Shown piece by piece: positions 24,167 through 64,000 of a stretch of DNA of 64,000 bases. Both the position numbers and the translations under genes were made by a program. Source of the DNA: Convolutriloba macropyga (lineage: Eukaryota); contig NC_134468.1 of the NCBI RefSeq assembly GCF_964194025.1, positions 6,200,001 to 6,264,000 of the forward strand, given 5' to 3'. The first letter of the stretch is position 1, and every line of letters begins with the position of its first letter. The notes under the pieces are model-generated. The model was not told the origin of the DNA. It searched no databases and was given only the letters and a program-made list of their open reading frames with translations.

Positions 24167-24353
24167 ATGGAGAAAGAGAATGGCACCGATTCAGACGCTT
24201 ATCGCTCTGTGTTCCCCAACAAACCTTATCCCCCCACACCCAGTACAATTCTGCCAAAACAAGTGGATGCTGGAAAGTTGGAGCAGTTCCAGAAAAAACA
24301 CTCAACTCACATCAAAGACAGCGATGACGAGGATAACGATGGCCCAAAACAAG
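24167..24353 (+). CDS. Channel A exon 1 (cytoplasmic N-terminus)
   Basis: ATG...KKHSTHIKD...KQ G|GTAAAG; homologous to gene B exon 1 (KKQPSHIKD...KQ G|GT). Confidence 0.75.
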
Positions 24354-27300
24354 GTAAAGTTGCAATCATATCAACTCAAATATTTTCTCGTGAGTGAAGC
24401 CGTTGGACAAAAGTTAGATCAGACTTCAATTTAAAAGCTGTGTAAATTACAAAATATATTAGTAGATAGAGCACTTAATAAATATTCAAAGAGGCAAGTG
24501 ATTTTGACAAGAATAAAGATATCTATTCTGTTTTTTGTTTTTGTCAGTTTTTTTTAATGAGCCAGTGTTAAAAATTATGTCCAGTCTTTTTTTATGACAC
24601 CTTTTAAAAATTATGTGTTGCTATATAGCACGTTACTATGTAAAAAAGCTGGATAAACCCAGAACAAGCCACAGAACAAGTTTATCCTCAATATTTTTTA
24701 GCATTTTGCGATATAACCAAAAAGCACTAGAAACAAAATATCAATTTGAAAGTTGCCAATTTACCAGCATGTCTTTAACTTATTACATGGACCAGCTAAT
24801 CATATTACTAAAATTACGTTTCACTTGATAACCAATTGTTGAACAGCGAGCTGAACAATACACACAGGTAGGTATACATATGCTTATTTGGTTAATTGGG
24901 GGGAAAACTATTAATTTAGTTTCTACATTATTCACTATGCATATGAAACTAATGCTAGCGTTTTGTTCAAAAAATGTTTCCCATTGATGAAAAATTTTGG
25001 TTCCCTGGCAGTTGGGTTTTGAGATATTTGTAAAAAGAGTTTTAAGCAGTTCGAAGGAAAATTACCAACAAGTGGTTATAATTGATGTACTACGATATCG
25101 CAATTCCTATCCACTACCCCATGACATGAATACCATAGATTTGTTCCTCCTAGCTCTGCGAAAAGTCAAATGTTGAAAAAAAAATAAAGCCAACATGTCA
25201 GCAATAAGGGCTTAGCCTTACTCCAATTACCGACCCTTAAAAATAGCACGTTTCCCCGGAAACGTAAAAAATAACATGCTCACTAAGCTCTGGGGACTGG
25301 CAAAGCAGAATAGACCCGAACATCGAGCAAAATCAAAAGTAATATTTGTCTAAGTGGACGTACAACAAACTGTTTACAAACTTAATTTACCACTTTCAAC
25401 CCAAATTCTTCTCTAGGTTCTGGGACGATGTCATCCATTAAAAAATCAGCGCTACGTCTCCAAGATGCCACGATGCCAGAGACGGCTACGGAGCACAGAA
25501 TTCTGCAGATCATTTGGATCCTGGCCTACATCGGCCTAACAGCTCTATTTCTCTATCAGTTCAGGTCACTCGAATTCTCATTCTTTCATATTTTTTCATT
25601 TGATTCCACAAAAATGACAAGAAAAACACAACTTTTCGAATTTTAAAAAGCAACCAATTATCATCACTGCACTGAAGCCAAACTTCAGCTTAAACCTAGA
25701 ATGTTTGGTTGGTTTACAAATATTCAAAAAAATATAAATGTTCCAGATTTCAAACAAGACGGCTCATGCAAGACTGTGCGTAGCACAAAAGTTCCAAGAT
25801 ACGGCTCAACTTTGTACAACTGTTTTTTTGTTCTGAGAGGAAAAGTTTGTTTTACAATCAGTCTAGCAAAACTCATATTGAAGAAATTCTTTGAAGGAAT
25901 CGTGATTAGAACGTTATTTAATATGAAAACTGAAAAGAAAATCACAACCCTCATTTCGATTTCATTTTAACAGATAATAAATCGGATGCATTTTAAAAAC
26001 TTGAAGTAACAATTCATAAACATGAATTTCACAAAGAGCAATCTTATCTTAAACAAACACAGACAGTAATTTCCAAGATATAAATGAAGCGATCAGTTTA
26101 CGAATAAATTATTGAATTTGTCCTCGTCCCAATAAAAATTTGCCCCATTGATGAGATACCTACCATAGTTAGACAAGATTCAGTTAAAAACTTCTCAAAA
26201 AAATCACCGAATATCAAGCAATCATCGCAAATGAGAGGTGTTTATGTCAAGTTCCGTTTTTTTCTGACAAGTTTGTTCCAAGTTATTCGTGATTCAGTAG
26301 ATCTATAATGGGGCAATTTCCAATTTCTCTCATTACAAAAACTGAAACCAACAAAAAATGTTTCTGCTCAATTATATTTGACAATTCGGTATTGGTATGA
26401 ATTGGTTTGATATTAAAGTTATTTGGTTTGATATTAAAATTTTTTATACTCAAACCGAGAAGTTTGTTATGTCAATGTCCTCGCGCAGTTGAATTCTTTA
26501 TTTTGATGAATCAACCCATTTTTGAGTCAACTGGACAAAAAACATTCAAAAGTCAACCAAGCATAAGTTGAGAAAAAGGTTGCAATATTGACGAACACAA
26601 TATTCGTCTTTTATTCAAACAAGTTTTTTATCCTTGTTACCAATTCCCTATATATGATCAATTGTGCCATTCATTTGTACACGGAAACTGTTAAGCCACT
26701 GAGCTTGATCTTGGCTAGTCTATTGCAGCAATTTAGAAGAAAAAACAGTTTCTACCTCAACAAACATGCCATAATCATTTAACGGAAAATAAATTAAGTC
26801 CTTCTGTAGAAAGCCAATTAAAACAAAATTCAAGTGGAAAAACCATAAGAGAAGCGCAAACATCAACGTCAATTCAAATCTGAGGCAAGGAAGTTGAAAA
26901 AAGAAAAACACTCTTTTCGATTTTTTTTCGCATTCTTACAGAGCTTTCCCTCCAGACAAACTAAGAAATCAAACTAAAAACATTAACCAATCAAACGTTC
27001 GAGGGTTTCAATGCAGAAAGTTAACAATACATAGCATCAATTTGCAAAAAAGATCATACCAAAAATTTGATTTTCTACTTTTCCTAAAAAATTCCGCATT
27101 TCAGTTTCCGAGTCTCTTTAGTTTGTGGTGACTGAAACGGTTGGGCAGCTATAGGCCAATGGATAACTTATTCTTAAGACACCTTAAGCATCAGGATCAA
27201 TCAACAGAAAAAATAAAAAAATCTTTCTCACCATTTTCCGTTTATCTCGTCTCAAATATCCCACTTATGGTCAATTCTGTGACAATTCAATCAAATCAAT

Positions 27301-30300
27301 TTCAGATAAAAAATGAGGTCTCAGATTGGGGTTTAGCCTATGCCCTGTCAGATCTATTGAAATAAGTTATTTTTGTTAAATAAAACTTTTGATCTTTCTC
27401 TTTATTAGTTCAATGAAGTTACAATATTGTCCCCATACTTTTGTCGTTGAATAAAAGTCTCTAAAGTGGTTTGGTCGGGGGCCCAGAAAAACCTCCACAG
27501 ATATAAATGAAAAATTTCAAATTACTGTTTTTTCCTTTCTCTAGTAATTTTGTTTTCTGTAGTTTTCCTGTACACAAGGAATATCACAGGTCTTCCTTCG
27601 GGAAGGTATTGTGTCAAATGAAGTAAGAGAAAATAAACATAGGAAAATCAGTATTTTAAAAGGTTTATTATGTTTCAAAGAAAACGGTAATTAATTTTTT
27701 ATAAAACTTATCGTCTGTTTAACTATCCGATTCACCTGTCTTACAAAAATTTTTGTGTTTCGGTTAAATCAAAATCATTCGAAACATTAAAAAAAGTTTA
27801 CAAAATGGGTACTAAGAGGAATTGAACAAAATTGCAGAACGCAAAAAAACGTGTTTTCTCTGTTTATTGTCTTTTGAATACTTAGATTTTATGAGGAAAT
27901 CTACAATTTCTTTTGTTTGCAAACAAAATTGTATCATAGAATATAATTATACATTATTATATAGTTCGATTATAATTTTTCTAGCAAATATATTTATATA
28001 GTTTAACATTTCGACATCCTCTGCAACGACGCAATGACCATACACAACCCCCCACCAAAAAAATAAGTAAATAAAAAACTTTCCTTTCCTTTTGTTCTCT
28101 GTTCATTTATAAACAGCTACTCTTCTTCAAAGTAATAAAATTAGAACTTTTTAAAATCAAATCTTGCCTCTAAGAAGGGCTACAAAAAGGTGTTTCAATG
28201 TTTGTTCTCTAAGATGCCAATACAAAGATTGGCAAAATTCAACGAGCAGCAAAACCAACTTAATTTTGAAACTGATCGAAGTTATTCGTAGTATGCGGGT
28301 CATATGAAAACAACAAAAACAAAAGATGTTATACAGTTTGACAATAAATTTTTCTCAATTCGAGAGAGTGATCGAGAGAAAGAGTAAATAAACACATTTA
28401 ATGGCTGCTACATTTTTTTCTGGTCAGCGAAAATATGAAGACATCAACAATAGTGAATTATTAACATGATTGATGTCCAATTCGGAAGTTCTAGTTACCA
28501 CCACTTGGATGCATAAAATGACATTAAAAAATGAAAGAGTAACAGAAATTGAAAAACTTAAAAAACTTGGAAAATGAAAGATTTTCCGACTTCAAAGAGG
28601 ATGACAAATTATTCTAAATACTTTTTGCCAGAATGATTTGAAAATGTGACACTTGTCAATTTTTACACGAAAAGTTAGTTTTCTAGCTCCGATTTTTTTA
28701 TTCCATTCCTCGCACATAAAAATAGGGTACATGGAATGAAAAACTTCTTATTATCAAGACAACACTTGACAAAGTAAGTGACCATAATTTTTCACTTAAT
28801 TTTATTAGTTCACTAAAAGTTTTCAACTGGTTCTTTTTTAAACTTTGAGTTTATGTTAAAATCTGATTTATATTATAAAATAATTGATAATGCATTTAGA
28901 TTTTCATACCCTTGATTCTGGCAAAACTATATCAACACAAGAGCTCCGAATAGTTTTTTTGTTTCGAAATAAAAAAAGTACTCAACATTGCTGCGGAAAT
29001 GATGCTTCAGCGGAGTTTGGAAGAATTGATAGTCAAGAGAACTTTTCGTCTCAGAACACCAAGATTTCGAAAATTTTTAGACTTGTGTTGGAAAATTTTG
29101 TGCTGCACAGTCTCGAGCGAACCGTCTTGTTTAATAGATGTTATATGCTGCAAAAAAAAGATGGCGTTCGACAATCCAACCTCACTGCTCATAGAAAACA
29201 CGGGGGAAAAATTGCAACACTAGCGTTTTGAGGACGATAGACATATGAACTTCACTTATATACATTAGATAAAATGGCCATTTTTAATGGGATTACGCGG
29301 TCAATGAGATAGGATTTCCAATGAGACGGGAAACAATACGGGGCTAATGTCGGATTTCTCGAAAATATATACTCGATTTTTTCAGTTAATTTGACGACCC
29401 CTGTTTTAAGATTAGTTGCGTGAGTCAAAACTGGTTTCACTCAGAAAATCTAGTTCGCTTAAAACTGGATATATGTGTAGTTATATTTTGTGATGCCTGT
29501 TTTTAGAGCTAGTGTGAAAACTTTGGAAAAAACTTCGCAAAATTAACACGCCGTTAAGTCACACTTTTCCACGCTATAAGTAACTCTTTCCAATTAACTT
29601 AGAAAGGTTAAATTGAGCCGAAATGAAAGAAAGCCCAATTGCTTATTAATATCAGTAATGCTCCTCTCGATGCTAAATGCGGATTAAGATGACGATTAGC
29701 AGCTTTGCAATTACCCATATTATTGTTCACAAGAACAAAGTCTTTGAATTGGGTCTGAAGTAATTACAAACAACATTTGGGCAGGACGGTTTTAGGCTGC
29801 TTACATGCTCAAAATTGTGGGAATGGGCTACGTTCATCCGTGAACACTAGTTACAAAATCAAAGCCTTTTCATACGATATAAGTAACTTATTTCCATGTT
29901 TTTTGTAACTATATTCCATCGTGGAAAATGGTAACTAAAAATGAAAAATAGGACAAGATTGTATCAAACGTTTCCACAAAATGCAACATTTATTGCAATT
30001 TGCCTTTTAGGACATTGGCCACGTTATGAAAAGTATGGCTCAGGTGAATCCTACATAGATCATAATACAATTTCAAATTAAAATCGAGGAAAACTGAATG
30101 TTACGTTGCTGTCTGTTTCAGCATTTTGGTGAAAAACTACCTGAAATATGATGTAGATATCAGTATTGAGATTCAAACGGCACAATCACTGAAATTCCCA
30201 GCTGTGACAGTTTGTAATGAGAACCCTTTGCGGAGATCTCTCGTTGAACGGGTCAATAAATTCGACGACTTGGTTCTCTTGGATGACTATGCAATGAGCT

Positions 30301-33300
30301 ATGTGTATTCAGTTGCAGAGAACACACATACCAACTTGAACTTCCCAGACTGTGCTGAAGGATTCGACGCATGTAGCAACACAAAAGTATGCAGAAAATT
30401 AAACAGTTACTGTCTAATTATGCCGTACATTATATTGCGAAATTGCTCGGATTGAGAAAAATTATGAGGCACAAAGCTTGTTCAGATCGCAGACCCCGTG
30501 GCTAAAATAGGCTATGTGCACAAAAACATTTTAAATTAAAATTAGGACACTCGTCATTTTAAACCCAGAACTTTGAGAATGAATTGCAACCAAAAAAGAA
30601 TTGCAACTTTGATGAAATGGAAAAAAAAGATGATGACGTAACACAAGATAAAATTTTGGAAAATGAATAAATGTGAACTATGAAAGCAGGAACGAAAAAT
30701 GCACTCAAATTATCCGAAGAATAATTAAATAACGCGAGCTGCGAGCACCTACACAATGATATGTTTCATTGGGAACTTCTGGTCAGAAATTGCTCAAATA
30801 ACTCTGGAATACCCAAAATTTATACAAATGTGAAAAAGAATTTAAAATCCATTTTCCCTTAAGCTTGTGTTTCGCTATTGAGCACCTCTTTCGTATAAGG
30901 AAACTGAGAATAATCCTAACGTTCTATGTAAGGGAAATCTGATTGATATAGCAACAAGGCGGCTCGGTAATGTGCGATGGCACATAAGGTTCCGACCCAG
31001 CCCATCCACAATTTTGGTATAATTGTCTACCAAATGAGGAACAGATGGAAAAAAACCCAAAAATTATTTTTTTGCGAATCCCAAAAAAGCCCAAGCCTTT
31101 TTCAAAAAACTCTGTATGAACGATAAGATAGCCTCCAAAGCAAATAACTCAGTGGAGAAAAAATTTATGCATTAGATTGCTGTAATATGTCATTATTAAG
31201 AAAGCGAGTCAAGAAGAACAGCAAAATCAAACAACAACAAACATTAATTACATCAAAAAATTTATGTCCCTCTTAAAAACTAAATTTAATAACAAAGTCA
31301 ACATACCGTCAGATAAACCTAAAACTAAACAAAAATAACTTATAAATCACCAGAAAACATATGCGACCAGTCCATAAAAAGGTTTGGTAACAATTATACG
31401 AAAAAGAACAAAAACAGTAAAGTAAAAAAATTAACTTATTTTTTTGAAACAGTTAACTTCAAAGTAATAAATACCATTAGGAATCAATTAATATTACTAC
31501 AAATTTACGATTACCGCTGCTTCTATAGAAGGGCATTAGGACCTGTCCTTATTCATTTTTGAAAGCGGCTAAAAAGAACAACAAAGACAACAAAATTTCA
31601 ATTGAAACTTGCCAGAAAACGCTGTCAAAACCGTCAAGCCAAATTTTGGCACTCAAAATATATTTGATAGCGCCTTCTTCAAACAGTTATAATGTAGTAC
31701 GTGGCCATTCATTAGAAGGACTAGGTAACAAAAAAGCGAAGTGCTAAAGTATGTAATACTTTTAATTTTTTTTTTGAAACAAAATTACATTCGATGTCAT
31801 GAAAGGCATTAATTACAAAAACAGCTATTTAATTAGGGTCGTTTATTCATGAAAAGGAAGCCCTCAAGACCTGTAATTATCCAGAATATTTCTTGCATCT
31901 ACAAAAAGAACGTCAAATATGACAAAAATCAAATTAATTGTGAAAAACCGTTGTCGAAGCCAGTAAGGTCATAACAAATTCTTTAAGAAAAAAAATTTTG
32001 GGACAACAATCTTTTTATTCCCTTGACACCCATAATGTCATATTTGACCTGTAATTAACTAACGAGATTAGGAAACAAAAAGAAACATAAAAAGAACAAA
32101 ATTGCGAAGTTAAAAAGTTTTTTTTTTAATTTTGGAAAACGATTGTTTTCAAAATCATGAAAGCCATCAGCTATCTACTAATATCAGAATATTGGTTCTT
32201 CTATTCTTCCATGAAAAGCCAATGAAAGCTATCACTATACAGGAAACTTCATACGACCGAAACGACAAAGTATAAATGACAGTTAGAGACAAAATTAAAA
32301 AAAATCAATTGATTTCTTCAAGAAAGAGGCGTCGAGGCCGTTAAAACGATGATGTATATCTTTCAGGATTTTAATATGTTCGATTGTGTCTCATTCTGAA
32401 TGCTAATAAGGTGACATGAGAACTGTCAATAATGTGACAAAATTAGAAAACGTGAAAAACTGGCAAATATCAAAACAAACAAAAATCTGAAATCTTGTAG
32501 TATCAAAGCCAGAAAACAATAACTTCAGGCTTAAAACTGCAACCGAGAATAAATGTTAAATCATTAGAAAGAAAAAGCAGTCTTTCTTTGCTGACACTAA
32601 GCTGGAAGTTGAACAAATTAAGAAAAAAAATAGAGGAAAAGTTAATAAAGCCATTATTTATTGAAAAGTCAATTAATTTTAAAAAAAAGAAACGCCCATG
32701 AACTTTCAATTAAAAAACTAAATGCATTAGCTTGGAGCCGCTGAGCAAGCGAATTGGTTGGACCTATCACTCCTGAGCTTTGATTTGATTTGTTCTGTTC
32801 TTTATTATTATAAAAAGGTCTTTTTTTAAAAAAAAAGACCGACTGATTACAACCCATTTTTTTTGGATTGCAACAGTCCAAGAATGGCCCAAAACTAGCC
32901 CTGCTAATAATTATTGTCCATAAGGAACAATTGACTTTTCGAATGTTGTAGATATAGATAATTTGTTAGTTGAAAACTCAAAATAAATTCTGCAATTTTG
33001 ATAATCAACGAGTAAAGTTAGCACAAAACGGCAAAGCTTTAACTACAGTGCACTCTCAGCGGACTCTGAAGTAGAAATAGCCCCCCTCTGAGTCTACAAA
33101 GATTGTATGGGTGTTTTTTGGGGGTGTACTGTCGGCAAATTTAATCAAAGTGGACTAAAGTAGCTTATTTCGTGCTGTTTTTGATGAAAAAGGCTAAATT
33201 TTGAAATGTTTATCCAGATTTTTTGACCAAAAAAATTAAATCAAAACAATCAACAATGCTTGTTCGTCTTCAAAAATAAAATCAACGACACTATTCTTAA

Positions 33301-36300
33301 AAATTATAACAAATTTTAGCAAAATTGACGAAAATTTAGGCAAAAATTCCGGAAAATGTGAATAAAACAATGTGAATTCACTCTTCTTTTCTCAGAAGTT
33401 TAAACCTCGATAACTCCCCGTAGAAAACGAAAATTAAAAAAATCTTTTTAATTCCATATTCTACGCTGGACGAGCTTTCTAATGATACCAATCTCAACTC
33501 TCTACGATGAATATATCGAGCGGCGAAAATTCACGGAACAAAAAAAACCCATTTGAGTATATAGTTCCTCCCCCCTCAAGAGGGTCGGAACAATAAGGTA
33601 ATTAAAATGTTGTTATTAACTCAGTGACCCTGACTTCGCCCTTAATTCAAGGTTCGCGTCACCAAATCAAGAACATATCTGTGACATGCCCACGGTCAGA
33701 TGTGTGTCGTCTAAATACAAAAGCTTAAGAAAGTTTAAAAGTTTTTGCACACTATCATTTAGACTTATTCCAGAGGGACCCATGGGCCCAAAATTAAAAT
33801 TCGCTTGGAGCAAATTTAAATTTTTGTAGTTTATATACTTCTGACTTGAGCATTTGTTTATGCTCTGCACTGCCTCCTTACTTCATATATGTACATGCAA
33901 AGTAGAGACTAATTCAGTGTTTTTTTAAAAATAGAACTGAAGGATGATTCTTTCAGGTTTGCATCTCTCATCAATGGATCTGCAATGGCATCGACAACTG
34001 CGGAGACAACAGTGATGAAGAGCTACCATACAACTGCACTGAAATACAAGAGGAAAGAAAAGCTAACAGAACTGAGGAGCAAGGTTAATAATTTCGCACG
34101 GCTTCATTCAGAAGTGACCGACCAATAACCCAAATTTTTGATCACGAGAGAGCTTTGCATTTACCCTGCTTTACCAGTTGAGAGACTGCTAGTTGATTAG
34201 TTGCACATCAAAAACATTTCGTTATCTCTTCGCAAAAGATATCTATCGGCCAACATTTGCTAAACAATAACTCGGCCTGGTATAAAATTCCTAAACTCAT
34301 ATAAATTTGGAGGACTGCGGAATAAAACTAGCCAAAGTTATTGCCCAATTTTAGGCATTTGCAACTGGCCCTATATTCAGTGTCCAGACGAAGAGCTCTG
34401 CGCAGTAAAATGTGACAACCGCTCTGAGTGTACAGAGACAAAGGGTTACGACGAGAGTCTAAAAGCTGGATGTACCGACAATTCATGCATTTTTATATTA
34501 GAGGTTACTTTGTTAAAATGCTCTTGACTAATCTTAAAAGTAAAAAAAGTTTTTTTGGCTATGACTCAGCTTTATTTTACATTGATTTTACAAATTTTAT
34601 GTCTCAAATTTGAAATTTTACGTCGTCCCGTTAGGAGGATATATTTGTTTTCATATTTTTCATCTTTCGAAACAATACTGAAGAATTGACTAAGCAAAAT
34701 ACAAGATTAAAAATGAAAAGATAGCCAAAGTCGTGGCAGAGAATTGCATTTTTGGGACAATAACCCGTTAATTTTAAATTCTGAGATGCATTCCTTGTAG
34801 CACTCTGCTTATACAATGAAATCAGCTCTCTAAATGCAGGAAATATACAAATTGAAGCATCAAAACTAAAATTACTAATGTGTCTTTCAAAATAATAATA
34901 ACATAGCTGGCAGATTGCCAGAAAATAGCCGCAATAGATTCGTAGATCGGCAGTCTAAAAAAAACAGTAAAAAAGACAGACCAAAAAAATTCGTCTTTTC
35001 ATTGAAGGCTGATCTGTTATATTTTGATTAAAAATCTGTATAAGTTTTTGCTGCCTCTATTAGTTGATCTCAAATAACCTTCATTTAGAGTGACACACGC
35101 CCATTTGACCTTATCTCTTTGAATTAAAGTAAATAAAAGTCAATTTCAAAGTGAGGAAGTCATTTTTGAGAGTGAGGTAAGTCAAGTGTGACCGAAAATT
35201 TAATCACGCGCATGAACAAAAAAAACTCGCTCCACTAAGAGCGAAAAATGACGTCACACCACCAATTCAGTTGAAATTGCATGAACGAATGAACAAAAAG
35301 TGGCTGTGACGTCATATGGTCGTAACAAAAATCATGACGACGAAATAAAAAAAAACCAAGAGAAGGCCAATAATAGCCCCAGCTATCGCTGTGCGGCTAT
35401 TAATAAGTTATACTAATGGAATTACGCTACAATGAACATCTATTGTCTGTCTTTGAGATTTATATAGCTCATTAGGCTGTCATTACACTGACTAAGGATA
35501 ACTAATTAATTAACGGACAACTGACTAAGCATTTTTTTCAGGCTAATCTTACCGAACAATACATCACTTCTGATAACTATCCCAACAACTATGATTCAAA
35601 CACTGACTGTTTGTGGTGGATTGATGCTACAGAATCTGATGACAAGATTGACATAACATTTGAAGATCTCTTCGCTGAAGGAGAGACAGCAGCTATTGAC
35701 ATACAAATCATATACTGAACCGTAATTTCTCCAGAAAAAAATTACTCCTGATAATTGCGTAAGCATCATAATTAAACTGGAAGGCTGCAGAAGAAATGAA
35801 TGCAACAGAAAAATTAGCCAGATACATTTAAAGAGTGAGATGCGCTAAATTGGAAAGTTTTCAGAGAACAAAAAACGAGATCACCGATTTTTATAGAACA
35901 TTCAGCGCTGCTAAAAACTTCCAAATTTATCAACTATCGCAGACTTAGAATAGTTCTGACAACTTTTACCTTTGCAGCGTTTAAAAAACGGTGCCAAAAT
36001 ACGGAGCGTGAATTCTTTTAGAAGTTTTTAACTTTTGTTTCTCGATTTTCCGAATGATTTTTGTCTTATTATGACTAGATTTTTTAGGAAGTTCCATATT
36101 AGAAAAAAAAATAGTTTATGTTGTGAGAAATTCAAATTAAATACTAAGCTTAATTGAGATTGGGTTTGATAGTTCTTTTGTCTACCCATCTAACAGGCTA
36201 GTGTGTGTGTGTGTGTGTGTCTGTGCGCGTCTGTGCAAGTGTGTCTGTGCGCGTGTTTCTGTGCGCGTGTGTCTGTGCGCGTGTGTCTNNNNNNNNNNNN

Positions 36301-39300
36301 NNNNNNNNNNNNNNNNNNNNNNNNNNNNNNNNNNNNNNNNNNNNNNNNNNNNNNNNNNNNNNNNNNNNNNNNNNNNNNNNNNNNNNNNNNNNNNNNNNNN
36401 NNNNNNNNNNNNNNNNNNNNNNNNNNNNNNNNNNNNNNNNNNNNNNNNNNNNNNNNNNNNNNNNNNNNNNNNNNNNNNNNNNNNNNNNNNNNNNNNNNNN
36501 NNNNNNNNNNNNNNNNNNNNNNNNNNNNNNNNNNNNNNNNNNNNNNNNNNNNNNNNNNNNNNNNNNNNNNNNNNNNNNNNNNNNNNNNNNNNNNNNNNNN
36601 NNNNNNNNNNNNNNNNNNNNNNNNNNNNNNNNNNNAAATATTTTTCAAACAGTAAAATATAATGGCTTTGCAGGTTAAATACAAGCTATTTTGACAACTA
36701 ACGTAGCTTAACTGTCAGGTTTAATGGTCAAAAACTCCACGGCAAAAACTCCACGAAAAAAACAACTAATTTTAGATAGGAAATAAATCCCACTTTTAAA
36801 TTTGAATTTTGGTCGTGCTAATTTGTTAATTTTGATAAAAGTCACAAACTGTTGCTACAATTTGAGTTTTGACTTCATTAGATTGGCTTCATTCTTCACT
36901 CGTCCTCCTCAAATTGCGCTCACAGAGCAGATGTTGAGCAAATATATCTATATCAAACAATCAGCACCTCAAAGTAGAACAGCCACAAAATTGCTCATTA
37001 AGTATTTTTGCGTGTCTTCACGTTTAATTGCTATCACGCAACCTGGCATTAGTACAAATATTTGTATTTTCCCCAGTGAATAGAAGGATTGGTCTTAGGG
37101 ACTACATTAAAACAATTTTTTTTTTGCATTAATTTACATGCTAAATGGTCCTAAATGGACTCTTTTGGTCCTAAAACGAGAAAAGGCGCATTGGATAGTC
37201 GCATCGCTAATACGAGGCCAATGCACGCCGAATTTTTCTTAACCGGGACAATTTTTAACTCCGAACTTTTCGTATTTGTCGATTTCAAAAACAGAAATAG
37301 ATGTTGAAATAAACATATTTCGTGGAGAAAAAATAGGACAATACCAAAACTAGAATGATCGTATACATGTCAATTTGTTGCTGATCAGGATCACCAGGCG
37401 ACTGTTTTGATTACGTTGAACTCTACGACGGACCAACAGTGAACGCATCAGCTATCAAAATCGACGGCCGACAGAAGGCTTGTGGCTATTCGAGCCCAAA
37501 GAAGAAAACATACAGCTCGACGGGGAGTTCACTTTTAGTTCGATTTGTATCAGATCAACTGAACAACTTTCGAGGATTTAGAATATCTTATCAGGCTAGC
37601 ATTGGTTTCCTCCCGTGAGAATTATTAAACATAGCCGGCAGATTGCCGGAATAGCTGCGAAAGAACAGACCTGCGTGCCATATAATAGATAGAAACAGAT
37701 ACAGATCTAAACTGAAAAAAAAATCGACGACGCTCAAAAAACTAGGTAAAAAACATTCAGCGATGAATTAATAAAGCTTGTTATAATTTATTCCACAGAA
37801 GCCTCTTATTAGGGACCTTTACTGCACATATGAGTTCCTTTGACCTTAACCAAATTCAAATAAAACTTGAGTTTTAAAGTGAAAAGTCATTTTATTGAGT
37901 GAGGTAAGTCACGTATGATCAAAATCTAATCACGCAAATAACCTAAAAACTTTTGCTAAAGCGAGTGAGAAATGACGTCACGCACGAAAATACCGTTAGT
38001 GAGAGGAAGAAGTCATTCGGAAAATTTGACTTTTTCAGCTTTGCTGTGTGAACAAATGTAAAACGAAAAAAGAGCGTCAGACGACGAAACAAAAAAACCA
38101 AGAGCACCGCAATATAGCTACGCTCAGCTTACAGCTTCGCAGCTATAATAAACATAGCCGGCAGATTGCCGGAATAGCTGCGAAAGAACAGACCTGCGTG
38201 CCATATAATAGATAGAAACAGATACAGATCTAAACTGAAAAAAAAATCGACGCCGCTCAAAAAACTAGGTAAAAAACATTCAGCGATGAATTAATAAAGC
38301 TTGTTATAATTTATTCCACAGAAGCCTCTTATTAGGGACCTTTACTGCACATATGAGTTCCTTTGACCTTAACCAAATTCAAATAAAACTTAAGTTTTAA
38401 AGTGAAAAGTAATTTTATTGAGTGAGGTAAGTCACGTATGATCAAAATCTAATCACGCAAATAACCTAAAAACTTTTGCTAAAGCGAGTGAGAAATGACG
38501 TCACGCGCGAAAATACCGTTAGTGAGAGGAAGAAGTCATTCGGAAAATTTGACTTTTTCAGCTTTGCTGTGTGAACAAATGTAAAACGAAAAAAGAGCGT
38601 CAGACGACGAAACAAAAAAAAACCAAGAGCACCGCAATATAGCTACGCTCAGCTTACAGCTTCGCAGCTATAAACAAACGTAGCCGACAGATTGGCCGGA
38701 ATAGCTGCGAAATAGAATTGCATGCTGTATAATACAGATAGAAACAAACATCTGTAAGTCCGCAGAAGCCTTTTTATTCGGAATTTTTATTTCACGTATC
38801 AGTTCCTTTGACCTTAAACTAATTCAAATTAAACATAAGTTTTAACCGTTTTTGAGAAATTTTCGATCACAGCCTGTTTTCTCGGTCTACTAAAAAATAA
38901 ATGTCAAAAATCATGGAAATATGTGAACAGATTTAAAAAAAAAACAGCTCCCCAATACATTTCAAATTCTTTGAATTGCAAGAAACAGCGAACAGATCAA
39001 TATAACTAGGCTCAACTTACAGCTTTGCAGCTATAAGAATTTTTTTCTCCCAGTAGAACTGTTTTCAGCAAAAAATCTGCATTTGGCAAAATATCTGCAT
39101 TTGCCAAATTTGCATCTTATAGAGAGTTCTAGCATTTCCTACACAATTAGTATTTTGTTTGATTTATAAGCACTACGGAATAACTTTTGACCTAATTTTG
39201 AATTTAAAAAGATTTAGCTACAAAACCAAAATTACACCTTTTGTTGACAAAATTTTCGTTGATAGTTTTCTATAAACTGCTGACAGATAATTGCAACACC

Positions 39301-42300
39301 TTTGTAAAATATAAGATTAAATCTAAAATTGAAACGCCAAATGGCACCTTTGTAAATAGGCAAGTAATTTAATACGTTCCTGTGAAAATTGAAATTTAAT
39401 CCATTATGAAAAGGACTTCGAATATGATGAAACCAATCACTAGGCATCCAGTAACGCCGAAGGCCGTAAAAAACGACAAATTGCAAACACAGATTCAAAA
39501 CTATCACAGTTCCAAAAGCGTCAAGTATATGAACATTTGAAGCAAAGATCTCAGACTTCGGCTACTTCCGGCTCCAATCGGATAAAGAAAGGGAAATTAA
39601 AAGGATTTTACTCGAGATATACAAGGCAAGCAGAAAATGACGACACTGACGACTCCGATTCCGATGAATACGATTCGGAAGAATACGAATATGAGTATGA
39701 AGGCGACACCGATTATGATTACGGAGATTACCAAAATTATGAAGATTATCAGAGGCAAAACGAGAATTTCAACCCATTTGATCAATTCGTCAACATATCT
39801 GAAAACGATTATTTCACTTTTTATGAGAAATCGAAACTACCCGATTTTTCGGACTTCAGATTAGCGACATTTTTTACGCAAAATGAAATGAAGTACAACG
39901 GGTACCAGAAAAACGATTTCATTGTTCAGTGCACATTTGACGGTAAAAAATGCGGAGCAACTTGGTTTAAAACATACCAAGACCCGTATTACGGAAACTG
40001 TTTCACTTTCAACTCAATCCGAGATAGAAATTTGTCAAATCCGGTTTTCATTCGGTCAAGTGCCAAAACAGGGCAAGAGTATGGGCTAAAACTCACTCTG
40101 TTCTTTGACGTGGAAGAGTATATTGGTCTTCTGGGACAGAATGCTGGCGGGAGGGTTCTGGTTTTTGACCCAGAAACAGAAGGACATGTCAGATCTCAAA
40201 GTTCTGCAGTGGGAGCAGGTACAATCACATTCATCTCAATCAGGTCAGCAAAACTAATCTTACAACATTATACTGTAATTAACAAATGCATTATAATTTG
40301 TGATAAAATCCATGACATTGACAAGAATATGTTCTGGGAGATTTTCTTCATGCAACCAAGAGTCACGCGAACATGCAGATAAAAACTGAAACATGACCGA
40401 CTCAGGTCGGAAGAACTGTTCCGAAACGACTGGCGAAGGGTTGGTTTTCGTAGTCGATAGCTCAAGCTAGGGAGCAGATCTTGACTGGGTGAAGAGGAAG
40501 TGTAAAGTGTAGAGGGGGCAAAATTAGGCCTACACAGCAGATGTTGTCGGATTGAGCGAGGGAGGGCTGCCATGCGGGGTTGTTGCAAGAGGGGTCCAAA
40601 GCTCCCGAGAATAGCCCTCTCGCCATACATAAATTGGTCTGATTGGCAGTTTCGGTTATTAGCAAACTTGTAAGCCACTGAGAGGACTCCTCAGCGACTT
40701 ACTGCCCTTGTGCTTTAATAGCCAGCAGATTGCCGGAAAATAGCCGCCGTTGACGCACTAAACGCACATCGGGATTGAAACAGAAAAAAAAGAAGAGATA
40801 GAAATTGACAAAAAAATTTTCCTAAGTTTCAGAAATTGTTCTAATTCAGTGCGCAGTTTGTTAGATTCTAAATCTATACTTACTTCAGCTTCTAAAATGA
40901 AAGGTATTAAACTTAATATTAATATCAGCAAGCAATCGCTCTAAGGAACTTTGATAACCTAACGCACTATGACATAATGACCGGGCTTTATCGGTTTATC
41001 CATTTTCGTTTGATTTTAATTTTGCTCTTTTAACATTGACCGCATTCACTACATTCCGTGATTTAATGCGTTAAAGAATTTAGAATCCATTCAGTTGAAA
41101 TATATTTTATAGTTTCTAACAGACTATCTAGGAAGGCAAATTTAGTTACTGATTTCTCTAGTTCGGTTATAGAAAATTCTGCGGAATTAAAACGGATTTC
41201 TAAATTCAAATGAACTGTGAACCTCGTGAAAAATTTGTACCATACCAAGTACTAAATTGGTATTAAGTTAGAACAGAAAGTCACACTGAAACTAACAGCT
41301 TTGTTCAAGAGCAAATCAGGAAAAAAACTCGCCGAGAAAATTAATTCAAGGATCTGGTAATAATTTCCACTTGAACCGGAAAAAAATTCAAGAAACGTCA
41401 AATTGCCCGGATAAAAATGCATGGAAAAAATAAGTAAATTCAAAACAATAACAACGAAGGAGTTGACAAAATTATTTCATTAAATTCAATTTGCGAAAAC
41501 TCTAAAATCAACAACCTAAGACTCTTTAAAAGAAGTGAACGTTCACAGAAAGAATTGAAACCTTAAAAAGTTTGGGCTGCAAAAAAGTTAGCATTATCTA
41601 AGATTTCAGAATTTTGGTTCACCGTAGGTATCAAAGCAGTTCAAAGAACCATTCAGCACAATACAAACTGTTTATACATATACTGTAACAATTTATACAG
41701 GTAGTAATCAACTACAAAAAATCAATTTTAATCTACCCAGACACACACACAACCAATTCCTCAGTATACAAACAAATAGCTCCGGGAATTTACAACGGCC
41801 CTATGATATTTTTATCAATTTTCAATATGAGTATTAGGTTTTTGTATTGTTTTAAATATATTAAACTCTTAAATATAAAACCATCAATTAGGATAAAAAT
41901 TTCCTCATTATATCTCTGGTACCTACTGGAGAAAAAAGTAGTTGAATGTTCGGCTCAATTTTAAAGAAAAACTAGATAATGAGCCAACAGTTTTACTTTT
42001 TTGCAATTTTTAATCAGAGAACCAATTTCTGGAAAGTGAGCAAAACAGTTCCAATAGTTAAATATACATCTTGAAACGATGTTTTTTTTGCTTTTTACCA
42101 TCACAAACGGTGATAATAAGAGTTTGACCATTGAGCACACTTTTTTAGGTTACCGACTTCTATCTACCGTAGTATTTGATACTTTAGAAAAAAAACCATT
42201 AACTTTTCGAAGAAATTTTAAATTTCGATAGTTTTTTTTTCCAAAATGAACCACTTTGGCAAAAAAGGGTTGTTTTGAGCAGTGATTTAAGGTAATATTT

Positions 42301-61000: not shown

Positions 61001-61617
61001 AGTTGAGGCGGCTATTAATACATCAAAATAGACTTTGGGGGGAAAATCAAACAAAATAATGGTCTTCTCTGTTCATTTAGACTATTACGGTCGTCTAAAT
61101 TTTTTTGAAAGAACGCTTTTTTAATCAAAATAGTTGATCCGGCGACCGTCGGGTTTCGCGATTTTTTTAAAAAAAAAAACACTTTGAAGCGATTTGACGA
61201 GAAATTATGATGAGGCGGGAAAAGTTGGGAATAATTTGGTTTTTATCCACTGCCCTATGACATTACCACAAAAAACTTCATGTTCCTCCTAGCGCAGAAA
61301 AAAATGTGATGAAAGAAGGCCACTCGTTATGCAGCAAATAAGGTCTGCGCAACATTTCGTTTCACGGCCGTTAAAAACTATAGTTTTGTGGTCAGCATCG
61401 AGTTTCCATGGTGAAATTTCTGGCGTTAGTGTGTTGTTCTCAGGAGCATCAAATTGGGTAATAACTTGAAATTTTCAGGCTACTCCAACAAAGCAAAATC
61501 TTACCTCTGATAATTATCCCGACAACTACGAATCAAATACTGACTGTATGTGGATAATTGACGCCTCAGCTCATGAGGAGAAAATAAGCTTGACATTCGA
61601 GGACCTTTACACCGAAG
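49083..61617 (+). CDS. DEG/ENaC channel subunit B, tandem paralog of A (exons 1-6; gene continues past the window end)
   Basis: Exons 49083-49305, 52801-52954, 55739-56003, 57417-57543, 59469-59617, 61479-61617. Same phases as A; exons 3-6 have identical lengths (265, 127, 149, 139 nt). Encodes TM1, FPAVTVCNENP, LDLa (VCIPIEWICNDVDNCGDNSDEELPFNC), LDLa-like repeat and CUB N-half (LTSDNYPDNYESNTDCMWII). Confidence 0.88.
50032..51494 (-). mobile_element. Family A tandem pair; second copy interrupted by a nested family-D element (51032-51437)
   Basis: Near-identical to 37627-38672; units start at 50032 and 50555. The family-A terminus resumes at ~51438. Confidence 0.75.
52383..52742. repeat. 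Tandem duplication, ~195-bp period
   Basis: AATCATCATTTGGTGTTAACGGAACACGG... occurs twice. Confidence 0.85.
53333..53491. repeat. 31-bp minisatellite, 5 copies
   Basis: AAACGCCCAATAAATTWTGATATACGGTTCT head-to-tail. Confidence 0.9.
55521..55691. mobile_element. MITE, same family (also a split copy ~24519-24650 + ~25240-25317 and a degenerate copy ending ~44433)
   Basis: GGATCTATTCTG...CAGAATAGATC; shared core TGTTGTTATATAGCRCRTTACTATGTAA. Confidence 0.75.
56226..56575. repeat. Imperfect foldback/MITE-like element with ~15-bp CCCC/GGGG subrepeats
   Basis: TTCACCCC-type repeats on the left are mirrored by GGGGTT/GGGATGAAAA on the right. Confidence 0.45.
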
Positions 61618-62105
61618 GCAAGCCGAACAAATTGACAAGAGAAACCTGAAAGTATGCTCCAAAACAGTATGTCTAAGTTTCATTAAAAGACGTCCAATTT
61701 TTCGAAAGATGAGTTTGGCTTATATGAGTTCTGCTCACTGCAATGGAGAAGCAAAGATGGCTAAGACGCACAGAGACCAAATGAAGTGTAACAAGGCAAT
61801 TTTGAATGCAGACTTGAGCTGGTTAAAAATGATCGCTAATTGTGAGAAAAAATTACAGCAGAAAATAATGCCAGCGATTAGATGCGATAGCTTTAGACAT
61901 TTAGTCTCAAAATACCAGTGAAAAGAACGAGATCTATAAAACATTGAACAAAAAATTTATTGAAACTGGAACAATATATGTACTTTAACGTTGCCTTCTA
62001 ACCTTCAATTAGATTATTCTTATTTAAATCATTTTTATCAAAATAGGTAAAAGTTAAATTGTGAGAGATAAATCACAATTAACCAAGAGATAATTCACGT
62101 GAATA

Positions 62106-62385
62106 AAACATAGCAGGACAAGTCCTGACACAATTCAAAGAGTTTTCATTGACTGAACAAAGACTACACCTAGAAAGAATTTTTGTTCAAACATCATTTT
62201 CTCACTTTACTTTGAAAGTGCAGTGAAAAATTCAAGTCGCAAAACTACTCGCTTTTTTCGCTAGACTACCTGTTTCGGTGTGACCAAAATCCCCTCTCCA
62301 ATTTGACTTCAAAAATCATGAAAATGTGCGATCAGATCTTAAAAACAAGACAGGGTCCTAAGACAATTCAAAAGCTTTGAATTGT
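62106..62385 (-). mobile_element. Helentron/DINE-like family D (also 51032-51437)
   Basis: Hairpin CAGGAC-aa-GTCCTG + CAATTCAAAG ... CTTTGAATTG. Confidence 0.65.
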
Positions 62386-64000
62386 ATAAATCATTACAAA
62401 AGGTGTGAAAAAAGTTGCCAGAAAAAAGCTGCAATAGCTTCGTAGATCTGCAGTCTCAAAAAAAAAACAGTAAAAAGGACAGACCAAAAAAATTCGTCTT
62501 TTCATTGAAGGCTGATATGTTATATTTTGATTAAAAATCTGTAAAAGTTTTTGCCTCTATTAACTGCTCTGAAATAACTTCATTTAGAGTGACAAGCACC
62601 GATTTGACCTTATCTCTTTGAATTAAAGTAAATAAAAGTCAATTTCAAAGTGAGGAAGTCATTTTTGAGAATGAGGTAAGTCAAGTGTGACCAAAAATTT
62701 AATCACGCGAATGAACAAAAAACTCAGAGCGAAAAATGACGTAACGCACGCACTTCAGTTGAAATTGCATGAACGAATGAACAAAAAGCAGATTTGAAGT
62801 GGTTGTGACGTCATATGGTCATAACAAAAATCGCCACGACGAAATAAAAAAAAAGAGAAGGCCAATAATAGCCCCAGCTATCGCTGTGCGGCTATCAAAC
62901 ACAATTACGAAAATTAGGCCAGAAGTCTCCATAAAATTAATGTCCTGAGAAAACTGACAGAAGTTCACAGTCCAATAATAGTAATATTCACTAATCCGAA
63001 GAAGAAAAATGAAACGTTAAGTGGATGCCTCTATAAGAGACATCGGAAATGCTCACATTCTCGTTCTTAAAACGCTAAAAAGCGTACGTCTGCGATATAG
63101 AAGTGGAAATCATCATTACCAAGCCCAAAACATGGGGAAGAACGACCTGCAAAACCAGGCTTATGATTTTGACAAATTTGAAAAGCAGTAAAAAGCCAGA
63201 AAAACTTTGAACCCAAATAATGTAGAGCTTTTACACCTATTACAATCCAAGCCCTTTCATTGCAAAAAAAAGAAATTCAGAAATAACAAATAAAAAACAG
63301 TCAGGAGAGGGAAAAGAAATATAGTTGAAACAGATTTGAACATGAGTTGCAAAACTTATGGCTGAGAATAAAGATAAAAGTGTTCCACGCAAAAACCTCT
63401 GATTATTAATTATATCCATATTTTAGAATAAATATCAAACAATTGTTCTGTGTTTAGAGCCCTATTACTTGTCTTTCATTGGCAGAGCTCTATAAAATTG
63501 TCCTTTCGATTAACTTTCAATATCAATTGAGGTTTATATCACTAATGTAAATTTTAAAGTTGAGTGCAAGAATTCCTTACAATTCGAGTGAGGCCGCAAA
63601 AACAATTGATTGCGAAGAACAACAACGTAGTCGCAAGAAATCTGACAGAATGAACGCTTAACTTCACAAAGTCCACAGCGTGTAGTTCGACAATGATTCA
63701 CTCCGTCAAATTTATATCTAAAAGAGAAGGACAAACAGACTTTCCGCTGCAAATTATCTACAAAAACCAAACGAAAAGATAAAATTAAGAAACCGAACGG
63801 TTAATAAGTCTCATTCATTCACTCATTGATGCGAGTTTTCTGTTTTCGAACAATCGTGTTTTCTGTTTAAGAATTAAATAAGAATAACAGTTGCTACAAA
63901 AAATAACTATAGAAACAGAGCCCTATTACAAAACTTTCAAGAAACAGTACAAATGCGGTTACGTATAGCGTAATCAATGTCATATACATGTTAAATAAAC

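What the first reader, a model, noticed from the sequence alone, without database searches (positions are those of the whole stretch)
35670..35730. Apparent GA-AG intron in gene A at the site where gene B has a GC-AG intron
Seen: CUB exon 6 ends GAAG|GAGAGA in A (35681) and GAAG|GCAAGC in B (61618). Both exons are 139 nt, and in both genes read-through hits an in-frame stop before any GT. Positions -3..-1 and +3..+5 match the donor consensus (AAG|G.RAG), and phase 1 joins exon 7 to give a seamless CUB (FAE-G-SPGDCFDY). Known: GC donors are rare but normal; GA donors are very rare, reported for example in Oikopleura and dinoflagellates. Inference: tolerance at donor +2 in this lineage, or a deliberately weak, regulated donor.
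Basis: partly seen in the sequence, partly recalled or inferred. Interest (0 to 1): 0.7.

Follow-up and report, generated by a model that had tools for sequence, protein, structure and literature searches.

The report
Hairpin-ended GA-AG intron in worm channel gene
An intron that starts with GA instead of the near-universal GT sits in a gene that is clearly still in use, and its two ends pair with each other, which probably lets the cell cut it out without the usual GT signal, although no RNA data were available to show the cut.

Summary
Gene A's CUB exon (35542-35680) ends GAAG|GAGAGA. Gene B's ends GAAG|GCAAGC. Only a junction at 35680/37389 rebuilds the CUB domain and a 910-aa open frame.

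The A at 35682 is not an error. Three DNA runs from two studies and a second, roughly 2% divergent assembly all carry it.

Gene A is not a pseudogene. Against its counterpart in that assembly pN/pS is 0.08, with no stops or indels.

A third tandem paralog (C, outside the window) also has GA at this intron.

In all three paralogs, intron 6 (GA/GC/GA) and intron 7 (GC in all three) have first and last ~30 nt that pair, with duplex energies of -14 to -23 kcal/mol. These are the six strongest of the 27 introns; none of the 20 clear GT introns pairs like this. The arms survived paralog divergence with saturated synonymous sites, with one compensatory pair change per intron.

None of 27 U1 snRNA copies compensates for a non-U at +2.

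Best reading: a real spliceosomal G*-AG intron helped by a terminal helix, possibly left by a transposon. This scan has already noted the same class several times elsewhere in this genome. Splicing itself could not be shown, because no RNA run was available.

The parts
35542..35680 (+). Gene A exon 6, the N-terminal half of the CUB domain (139 nt, ends GAAG, phase 1).
   Evidence: Pfam CUB profile positions 9-46 of 110, E = 1.9e-8.
35681..35682 (+). The GA donor dinucleotide of intron 6 (context AAG|GAGAGA).
   Evidence: no variant in three DNA runs; identical in the second assembly.
35681..37388 (+). Gene A intron 6, GA-AG, 1708 nt. This length includes a 347-N run at 36289-36635, which was not read or filled.
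   Evidence: Length mod 3 = 1 and there is an in-frame stop at 35716, so retention cannot be translated through.
35684..35712 (+). 5' arm of the terminal helix of intron 6 (intron positions +4 to +32, core CAGCAGC.ATTGACAT).
   Evidence: RNAduplex gives -22.7 kcal/mol, 24 pairs, z = -5.2 against shuffles, empirical p = 0.003.
37354..37387 (+). 3' arm of the terminal helix of intron 6 (positions -35 to -2, core ATGTCAAT..GTTGCTG), directly before the AG acceptor at 37387-37388.
   Evidence: Invariant in all DNA runs and in the second assembly.
37389..37594 (+). Gene A exon 7, the C-terminal half of the CUB domain (206 nt).
   Evidence: Pfam CUB positions 56-110 of 110. 67% amino-acid identity to paralogs B and C.
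37595..39443 (+). Gene A intron 7, GC-AG (CAG|GCTAGC...CACTAG|GC), also hairpin-ended. Arms lie at 37595-37622 and 39416-39443, core ATTGGTTTC/GAAACCAAT.
   Evidence: -16.5 kcal/mol. A GT 10 nt downstream would give a stop after 3 codons with the only frame-compatible acceptor.
39444..40243 (+). Gene A exon 8 (linker plus ASC channel domain).
24167..44962 (+). Gene A as a whole: 10 exons, 910 aa, a DEG/ENaC (ASC) channel with an LDLa-LDLa-CUB insert.
   Evidence: pN/pS 0.08 against its counterpart in the second assembly.
61479..61617 (+). Gene B exon 6 (139 nt), followed by the donor AAG|GCAAGC.
61618..64000 (+). In-window part of gene B intron 6. It is GC-AG, 11251 nt, and ends 8868 nt beyond the window. 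Its 5' arm is 61618-61651, core AATTGACAAG.
   Evidence: -17.6 kcal/mol, with a perfect 10-bp core.

Best explanation
Intron 6 of gene A is a genuine intron with a GA-AG boundary that is removed precisely. It belongs to a class of hairpin-ended introns that begin with G followed by a base other than T.

Shown here:
- The gene is intact and under strong purifying selection.
- The GA is fixed in every DNA source examined.
- The same intron is GA in paralog C and GC in paralog B.
- In all three paralogs, the first and last ~30 nt of intron 6 and of the neighbouring GC-AG intron 7 form a 20-24 bp helix. It starts 0-4 nt from the donor and ends 0-3 nt from the acceptor.
- The 20 clear GT introns of the same genes have no such helix.

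Inferred:
- The helix places the two splice sites side by side. The spliceosome can then use a donor that mismatches U1 at +2, so +2 is free to drift between A and C.
- The conserved AG|G at both junctions and the invariant 3' AG suggest the ordinary U2-type spliceosome does the cutting.
- The paired arms may be the remains of the terminal inverted repeats of a DNA transposon that inserted at an AG|G site before the gene triplicated. This is the weakest inference.
For: Sequence and frame:
- The junction 35680/37389 is the only one that joins CUB profile positions 9-46 to 56-110 and keeps a 910-aa ORF. The same holds for B (988 aa) and C (886 aa).

Reality of the GA:
- Three DNA runs from two studies show no variant.
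- The second assembly (ENA ERZ25071359) has the same donor and identical arms.
- The counterpart of gene C in that assembly keeps its GA as well.

Gene function:
- Between paralogs dN/dS is 0.09-0.12 with dS above 1.5.
- A against its counterpart shows 35.5 synonymous and 11.5 non-synonymous changes, pN/pS 0.08, with no indels or stops.

Helix:
- RNAduplex of the first against the last 35 nt gives -14.0 to -22.7 kcal/mol for the six non-GT introns.
- The other 21 introns (20 clear GT plus the ambiguous intron 5 of C) give -2.6 to -11.9. Separation is complete, Mann-Whitney p = 1.3e-4.
- Empirical p against unrelated pairs of intron ends is 0.003-0.04.

Conservation:
- The arms are still recognisable between paralogs whose synonymous sites are saturated.
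- There is one compensatory double change in each intron. In intron 6, U-A in A corresponds to A-U in B. In intron 7, U-A in A corresponds to C-G in B and C.
- In the counterpart of C, both changes inside the 3' stem fit the structure: one creates a C-G pair, the other turns G-C into G-U. A third change in the last 35 nt falls in an unpaired stretch.

U1:
- All 27 scored U1 copies keep the A that pairs with a +2 U, so none compensates for GA or GC.

Precedent:
- Inverted-repeat, non-canonical introns are described in Amoebophrya, Fritillaria and Euglena (PMC7789003, PMC11282704).
- RNA-supported GA-AG introns with an upstream AG are described in Oikopleura and Eurytemora (PMC7072748).
Against: - No RNA evidence. 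No RNA run holds the locus. No spliced product is in the protein libraries. No retrocopy or metagenome contig carries the spliced junction.
- The six hairpin introns are only two independent intron positions, each in three homologous copies.
- Covariation rests on two column pairs. Most of the arm conservation is conservation of sequence, which a protein-binding motif would also explain.
- The helix covers the region where the branch point and pyrimidine tract normally lie, so it would have to open during splicing.
- In a whole-intron fold of C's 356-nt intron, the terminal helix is not part of the minimum-energy structure.
- Transposon origin is weak. C's intron is single-copy in the genome. 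The AGGA/AGGC direct repeats at the junctions cannot be told apart from the ordinary AG|G splice consensus.
Confidence: 0.6

Rival explanations
1. The intron is a real GA-AG spliceosomal intron, but the terminal pairing plays no part in splicing. It is either a slowly decaying inverted-repeat relic or a conserved protein-binding motif. In this reading the spliceosome of this lineage simply tolerates A or C at +2 when the rest of the donor (AAG|G.RAG) is good. That is the first reader's 'tolerance', possibly with weak or regulated use.
For: - The donor contexts AAG|GAGAG and AAG|GCAAG match the consensus at -3 to -1 and +3 to +5.
- Arm conservation is mainly sequence conservation, with few covarying pairs.
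- The helix is absent from the whole-intron minimum-energy fold of C.
- GA-AG introns without reported hairpins exist in Oikopleura and Eurytemora (PMC7072748).
- U1 genes here have varied 5' ends, which hints at relaxed donor recognition.
Against: - Separation between non-GT introns with a helix and GT introns without one is complete across 27 introns.
- The arms persisted through dS above 1.5, where neutral relics should have vanished.
- Two compensatory changes and two structure-compatible changes were found.
- C's donor, AAG|GAATG, is poor at +4.
- Earlier notes of this scan report the same association in other genes. I did not check those.
Confidence: 0.2
2. The intron is removed by a route that is not the standard U1/U2 pathway. 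Candidates are a U1-independent or otherwise modified spliceosome, or a machinery like the one proposed for euglenid non-conventional introns, which recognises the helix rather than the dinucleotides.
For: - The helix begins 0-4 nt from the donor and ends 0-3 nt from the acceptor, as in euglenid introns, where +4 to +6 pairs with -8 to -6 (PMC11282704).
- Intron 6 of A even has CAG at +7 to +9 and CTG at -8 to -6.
- The 3' arm occupies the usual site of the branch point and pyrimidine tract.
- No U1 copy compensates at +2.
Against: - All six introns keep AG|G at the donor junction, G at +1 and a 3' AG. These are hallmarks of spliceosomal introns that euglenid non-conventional introns lack.
- Canonical U1 is present in at least 12 copies.
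- Most introns of the same genes are ordinary GT-AG.
Confidence: 0.08
3. Gene A is never spliced correctly at this intron. It would be a splice-dead or decaying copy whose function is covered by paralogs B and C.
For: No transcript evidence of any kind was found.
Against: - The 910-aa ORF across 10 exons is intact.
- pN/pS is 0.08 over the most recent 7% of synonymous divergence, with no indels.
- The GA and both arms are identical in the divergent assembly.
- Paralog C has the same GA and is equally constrained, pN/pS 0.10.
Confidence: 0.04
4. The A at 35682 is an assembly or sequencing error, or a rare allele of a GT or GC donor.
For: None was found. One of the DNA runs may be the data the window was assembled from.
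Against: - Contigs of three runs from three samples and two studies agree, including a 2016 run that differs at other intron positions.
- An independent assembly agrees.
- Heterozygous variants are visible elsewhere in the same runs but not at this site.
Confidence: 0.01

Closest known systems
GA-AG introns of Oikopleura dioica and Eurytemora affinis (Frey and Pucker 2020, PMC7072748)
   Same: Both are animal nuclear introns with a GA donor, preceded by a conserved exonic AG and ending in AG. GC-AG introns are used in the same genome.
   Different: Those introns are supported by RNA-seq; this one is not. The paper reports no terminal pairing. It found a conserved A at +3, whereas A here has G and C has A. 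One Eurytemora U1 copy carries a change in the region that binds the donor, which the authors suggest could allow GA recognition. None of 27 U1 copies here is changed at the position that pairs with +2.
Introner-like non-canonical introns with inverted and direct repeats: Amoebophrya IEs (PMC7789003) and Fritillaria borealis non-canonical introns (Henriet 2019, as reviewed in PMC11282704)
   Same: An inverted repeat of 8-20 nt or more links the 5' and 3' ends of the intron and forms a hairpin that joins the exon borders. Short direct repeats overlap the junctions. The donor is non-GT.
   Different: Those introns are young, multi-copy and lineage-specific, with highly variable boundaries (AG-AC or AG-AT in Fritillaria). 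Here the introns are single-copy. They are older than a gene triplication whose synonymous sites are saturated. They keep G at +1 and a 3' AG, and their arms appear to be maintained by selection.
Euglenid non-conventional introns (reviewed in PMC11282704)
   Same: A helix close to both ends brings the intron termini together. Intron length varies widely (356 to 11251 nt here) while the ends are conserved.
   Different: Euglenid introns lack conserved GT/AG-type borders and a pyrimidine tract, and they are excised as circles by an unknown machinery. Here AG|G at the donor junction and the 3' AG are invariant.
[quoted passage not shown]
   Same: A GA donor that the major spliceosome uses efficiently.
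   Different: According to that citation, its use depends on a canonical splice site 6 nt upstream. No GT lies within 60 nt upstream of 35681 outside the conserved CUB core.

Membership tests
Spliceosomal GA-AG intron (Oikopleura/Eurytemora type) | The intron is removed from the mRNA exactly at GA...AG, shown by spliced reads or cDNA. | not testable with these tools
   No RNA run holds the locus, and the runs laid on it are DNA. No spliced protein, retrocopy or contig was found.
Spliceosomal GA-AG intron (Oikopleura/Eurytemora type) | The junction preserves the frame and restores a conserved protein domain, and no alternative canonical site can do so. | tested here: met
   CUB positions 9-46 plus 56-110. 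Full ORFs in A, B and C. An in-frame stop lies before the first GT.
Spliceosomal GA-AG intron (Oikopleura/Eurytemora type) | The exon ends in AG before the GA, and +3 is A. | tested here: inconclusive
   AAG|GA is present in both A and C. At +3, A has G and C has A.
Transposon-derived hairpin introns (introner-like, with inverted and direct repeats) | An inverted repeat of at least 8 nt links the 5' and 3' ends of the intron. | tested here: met
   20-24 pairs and -14 to -22.7 kcal/mol in all six non-GT introns. These are the top six of 27.
Transposon-derived hairpin introns (introner-like, with inverted and direct repeats) | Direct repeats of 3-5 nt (target-site duplication) overlap both junctions. 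| tested here: inconclusive
   The repeats are AGGA (A intron 6), AGGC (B intron 6 and all intron 7 copies) and AAGG (C intron 6). AG|G is also the ordinary splice consensus, and 3 of 7 GT introns of gene A show AG|GT...AG|GT.
Transposon-derived hairpin introns (introner-like, with inverted and direct repeats) | The intron sequence belongs to a repeated family in the genome. | tested here: not met
   C's complete 356-nt intron 6 matches only itself in the 1.18-Gb assembly.
Transposon-derived hairpin introns (introner-like, with inverted and direct repeats) | The intron position is lineage-specific, that is absent from homologs in other species. | tested here: inconclusive
   Three distant homologs (L039, L042, L043) encode the region from the first transmembrane segment through the LDLa and CUB modules and past the CUB end in one uninterrupted ORF, so positions 6 and 7 are empty. 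They also lack the GT introns 2-5, so gain cannot be told from loss.
Euglenid-type non-conventional intron | Borders lack conserved GT/AG-type dinucleotides. | tested here: not met
   G at +1 and AG at the 3' end in 6 of 6 introns, and AG|G at every donor junction.
U12-type (minor spliceosome) intron | A 5' splice site of the form RTATCCTT and a TCCTTAAC branch site near the 3' end. | tested here: not met
   The donors are GAGAGA, GCAAGC and GAATGC. Only C has a TCCTTAAT-like string, and it is not shared by A or B.
CUB domain (PF00431) inside a DEG/ENaC channel (PF00858) | Pfam matches above the gathering score. | tested here: met
   CUB scores 35.1 and 30.0 bits for the two half-exons. ASC scores 29-92 bits on exons 3, 8, 9 and 10. 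LDLa scores 30.1 bits on exon 4.

The most novel reading that the evidence does not exclude
This acoel would have a structure-guided mode of splicing. A conserved helix between the two ends of an intron defines the cut sites, so the second base of the intron no longer matters (GA, GC and, per other notes of this scan, GG). Recognition of the donor by U1 would be partly or wholly dispensable. Selection would have kept this arrangement for a very long time rather than it being a short-lived transposon scar.
Probability: 0.35. Interest if true: 0.75.

Novelty: new variant of a known kind. Interest (0 to 1): 0.58.

Why it matters
The GT at the start of introns is among the most fixed signals in eukaryotic genes. 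Here an animal gene under strong selection carries GA at that place, in two old gene copies and in two assemblies. The only obvious feature that sets these introns apart is a conserved helix joining their ends.

If the helix does replace part of donor recognition, acoels would be a tractable animal case of RNA structure defining splice sites. They could also show how transposon-like insertions become permanent introns.

There is a practical consequence too. Gene predictors that allow only GT or GC donors will break such genes, so annotation of this genome needs a rule for hairpin-ended introns that begin with G and end with AG.

Tried and rejected
- RNA evidence. The look-up of sequencing runs listed no RNA run. 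The four runs laid on the locus were DNA contigs, and one of them (organism B) matched only a high-copy repeat at 34900-35406.
- Protein libraries. The search with exon 7 found no spliced A, B or C product. Its only close hit, P0015, is an unspliced genomic ORF.
- Spliced junction in DNA. Searches for processed retrocopies carrying the spliced junction of A or C in the own genome (3 mismatches allowed) found nothing. The A junction in JGI metagenome contigs found nothing either.
- Compensating U1. None of 27 copies is changed at the position that pairs with +2.
- Repeat family. C's intron 6 is single-copy in the genome.
- Known RNA families. An Rfam scan of 33500-40500 gave nothing below E = 0.4.
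- Cofolding. Cofolding 95-nt intron ends did not discriminate between intron classes, because long AT-rich ends pair anyway. I therefore relied on the 35-nt duplex test.
- Whole-intron fold. The fold of C's intron 6 did not contain the terminal helix. I kept this as a caveat.
- Readings rejected. U12-type: no RTATCCTT. A-to-I editing of +2: it would give GG, not GT. Shifted boundaries inside the AGGA/AGGC repeat: they give inconsistent 3' ends (TC, GC, CA), whereas the G*-AG placement gives AG every time.
- Literature. Searches for acoel with GA-AG or with 'non-canonical splice' returned no relevant paper.
Full report
**The observation**

Reading the window confirms every point of the finding.
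- Exon 6 of gene A is 35542-35680 (139 nt, frame 0). It ends ...TTCGCTGAAG and is followed by GAGAGA, so the intron begins with G at 35681 and A at 35682.
- Exon 6 of gene B is 61479-61617 (139 nt) and is followed by GCAAGC.
- Read-through meets TGA at 35716-35718 in A, before the first GT at 35722. In B it meets TGA at 61647-61649, before the first GT at 61652.
- Exon 7 of A begins at 37389 after CAG. The phase-1 junction reads FAE-G-SPGDCFDY.
- Pfam places exon 6 on CUB profile positions 9-46 and exon 7 on positions 56-110 of 110. The two exons are therefore the two halves of one domain and must be joined.

**The genes**

The genes are DEG/ENaC (ASC) channels with an LDLa-LDLa-CUB insert. 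Earlier notes of this scan name the organism as the acoel Convolutriloba macropyga. I could not check that name, because organisms are coded in the run tables.

The window is G000:C1:6200001-6264000. I fetched 60 kb downstream and found three tandem paralogs:
- A at 24167-44962;
- B at 49084-85281;
- C at 96020-114252 (window numbering continued past the window's end).

Each has ten exons, with identical sizes for exons 3-7, 9 and 10. They give uninterrupted ORFs of 910, 988 and 886 aa, but only if two conditions hold. Intron 6 must be GA-AG in A, GC-AG in B and GA-AG in C. Intron 7 must be GC-AG in all three.

The lengths of intron 6 (1708, 11251 and 356 nt) are not multiples of three, and each read-through has a stop.

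**Is the A at 35682 real?**

No RNA run was listed for this locus. I laid contigs of four runs on 33900-37650.
- X1 and X3 (one study, two samples) cover the exon 6/intron 6 boundary as unspliced genomic sequence with no difference.
- X5 (a 2016 study, with its own SNPs at 35991-36029, 37318 and 37342) does the same.
- X6, from another organism, matched only a very high-copy repeat at 34900-35406.

A protein search with exon 8 then led to an independent ENA assembly (ERZ25071359, a 541-kb contig) that carries counterparts of A (L041) and C (L040). Its exons are 95-100% identical to the window's, and several introns differ by large indels.
- The donor in the A counterpart is the same, gaag|GAGAGACAGC. 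The first 51 and last 46 nt of intron 6 are identical.
- The C counterpart keeps gaag|GAATGCAG.

An error or a rare allele is excluded.

**Is gene A alive?**

- Between paralogs, dN/dS is 0.09-0.12 with pS 0.66-0.72 (dS above 1.5). The CUB exons alone give about 0.1.
- More telling is A against its counterpart in the second assembly. There are 47 differences in 2397 coding nt, 35.5 synonymous and 11.5 non-synonymous. That gives pS 0.073, pN 0.006 and pN/pS 0.08, with no indel or stop.
- C gives pN/pS 0.10.

A gene that could not remove intron 6 would not show this pattern. This is strong indirect evidence that the GA-AG intron is removed precisely. It is not direct evidence.

**What sets these introns apart**

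I used RNAduplex on the first 35 nt against the last 35 nt for all 27 introns of A, B and C.

| Intron | A | B | C |
|---|---|---|---|
| 6 | -22.7 | -17.6 | -14.0 |
| 7 | -16.5 | -22.5 | -21.4 |

Values are in kcal/mol.
- The other 21 introns (20 clear GT plus the ambiguous intron 5 of C) give -2.6 to -11.9.
- The six non-GT introns are the six most stable of the 27. Mann-Whitney p is 1.3e-4, with the caveat that they represent only two independent positions.
- Against 648 pairings of unrelated intron ends, the empirical p is 0.003-0.04.

The helices have 20-24 pairs. They start 0-4 nt from the donor and end 0-3 nt from the acceptor.
- In A's intron 6, CAGCAGC.ATTGACAT (from 35687) pairs with ATGTCAAT..GTTGCTG (ending at 37383).
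- C's intron 5 (GTG|GCACGT) has no helix. It can equally be read as a GT donor 3 nt upstream.

**Conservation of the arms**

The paralogs have saturated synonymous sites, yet both arms remain recognisable. Each intron shows one compensatory double change.
- Intron 6: U-A in A (GACAU/AUGUC) corresponds to A-U in B (GACAAG/CUUGUC).
- Intron 7: U-A in A (AUUGG/CCAAU) corresponds to C-G in B and C (AUCGG/CCG).

In the second assembly's copy of C, both changes inside the 3' stem fit the structure: one creates a C-G pair, the other turns G-C into G-U. A third change in the last 35 nt falls in an unpaired stretch.

This supports selection on pairing, but the sample is small. Most of the conservation is of sequence, which a protein-binding site would also explain.

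In a whole-intron fold of C's 356-nt intron, the terminal helix is not in the minimum-energy structure. Cofolding of longer ends does not discriminate between intron classes.

**Spliceosome side**

The genome has at least 27 U1 genes. Twelve have the canonical 5' end AUACUUACCUG. The others have varied 5' ends: UUGAUUACCUG...AAAACCUG, AUUUAUACCUG, AUACUAACCUG, AUACUUACUUG and ...CAGAACCUG.

All of them keep the A that pairs with a +2 U. No U1 copy is adapted to GA or GC donors, which fits a role for something else, such as the helix. The donors do not match the U12 type.

**Origin**

The paired arms lie directly inside AG|GN...AG|GN junctions: AGGA in A's intron 6, AGGC in B's intron 6 and in all copies of intron 7. 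This resembles a transposon with terminal inverted repeats flanked by a target-site duplication. Such an origin is described for the non-canonical introns of Amoebophrya and Fritillaria (PMC7789003, PMC11282704) and was proposed by earlier agents of this scan for other genes of this genome.

I count this as compatible, not shown, for three reasons.
- AG|G is also the ordinary splice consensus.
- C's intron is single-copy in the genome.
- Three distant homologs (L039, L042, L043) have the whole LDLa-CUB region in one uninterrupted ORF. That empties positions 6 and 7, but it also empties the GT intron positions 2-5.

If a transposon was the origin, it inserted before the gene triplicated. The arms have been kept far longer than a neutral scar would last.

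**What could not be done**

No RNA evidence could be obtained.
- No RNA run was listed.
- No spliced product is in the 1.8-billion-protein representative library or the 5.8-billion-sequence protein database.
- No retrocopy or metagenome contig carries the spliced junction.

The 347-N stretch at 36289-36635 inside A's intron 6 was left as it is. I aligned the whole intron only to obtain identity figures, and I neither printed nor used the letters opposite the Ns.

**Verdict**

- The GA-AG intron is almost certainly real and functional. I put that at about 0.85 on indirect evidence.
- The best mechanism is helix-assisted splicing that leaves +2 free, at about 0.55-0.6.
- Transposon origin is possible, at about 0.4.
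- A regulated weak donor has no support.

In the literature I searched, hairpin-ended non-canonical introns are known from a dinoflagellate, a tunicate and euglenids, and GA-AG introns from Oikopleura and Eurytemora. I found nothing for acoels.

Within this scan, the same class has already been noted several times on other DNA of this genome, always without RNA proof. This case adds several things:
- the GA/GC/GA series at one old intron;
- a second assembly;
- evidence of recent purifying selection;
- a within-gene contrast against 20 clear GT introns;
- the U1 survey.

Noticed in passing
Own genome, loci L012-L038 (for example G000:C15:12297861-12298022 and G000:C10:13481482-13481642): At least 27 U1 snRNA genes are present. 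Twelve have the canonical 5' end ATACTTACCTG. About 15 have altered 5' ends: TTGATTACCTG (4 copies), ..TTTAAAACCTG (3), AAAACCTG (2), ATTTATACCTG (2), ATACTAACCTG, ATACTTACTTG and ..CAGAACCTG. ATACTAACCTG would match the GTTA-type donors that are common in these genes. This may be a family of U1 variants for diverse donors.
   Followed up: partly
Window 37595-39443: Intron 7 of gene A is GC-AG (CAG|GCTAGC...CACTAG|GC), and its ends pair (ATTGGTTTC/GAAACCAAT). The same holds in B and C. Exon 7 is thus flanked by two hairpin-ended non-GT introns.
   Followed up: yes
Window 34900-35406, also about 9400-10300 and 62450-62900: A dispersed repeat of about 500 bp lies inside intron 5 of gene A. Summed contig depth on it is about 2 million in run X1, against about 50 for flanking sequence. 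It is also the only part matched by a run from another organism (X6).
   Followed up: no
Window 37615-38680, similar to 50020-51060 and to 120631-121734 in extended numbering: A tandem duplication with a unit of about 523 bp lies inside intron 7 of A. Related copies lie in the long first intron of B and downstream of C.
   Followed up: no
L010:190-210 (extended coordinate 104199/104200): Intron 5 of paralog C reads CTAGTG|GCACGT, where A and B have GAG|GTTAC. It is either a GC donor without any terminal helix or a GT donor 3 nt upstream that drops one codon. The second assembly has the same sequence.
   Followed up: partly
L039:3001-5578, L042:1463-11317, L043:876-7785: Homologs in two other ENA assemblies (ERZ25074608 and ERZ26859043) encode the region from the first transmembrane segment through the LDLa and CUB modules and past the CUB end in one uninterrupted ORF. 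In L042 and L043 a single long gap lies in the acidic, Tyr-rich linker. The intron-exon structure of this channel therefore differs greatly between species.
   Followed up: partly
Window 34092-34151 against extended 103667-103726: About 60 nt at the start of the short intron 4 are conserved between paralogs A and C. The alignment score of the first 30 nt is 12, against 1-6 for most GT introns. Their exons have saturated synonymous sites, and this conservation is unexplained.
   Followed up: no
L007:about 600-760 (gene B exon 8): Gene B's linker carries about seven tandem copies of the hexapeptide YQPNYD, which A and C lack. This accounts for most of B's longer exon 8 (992 nt against 800 and 704).
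   Followed up: no
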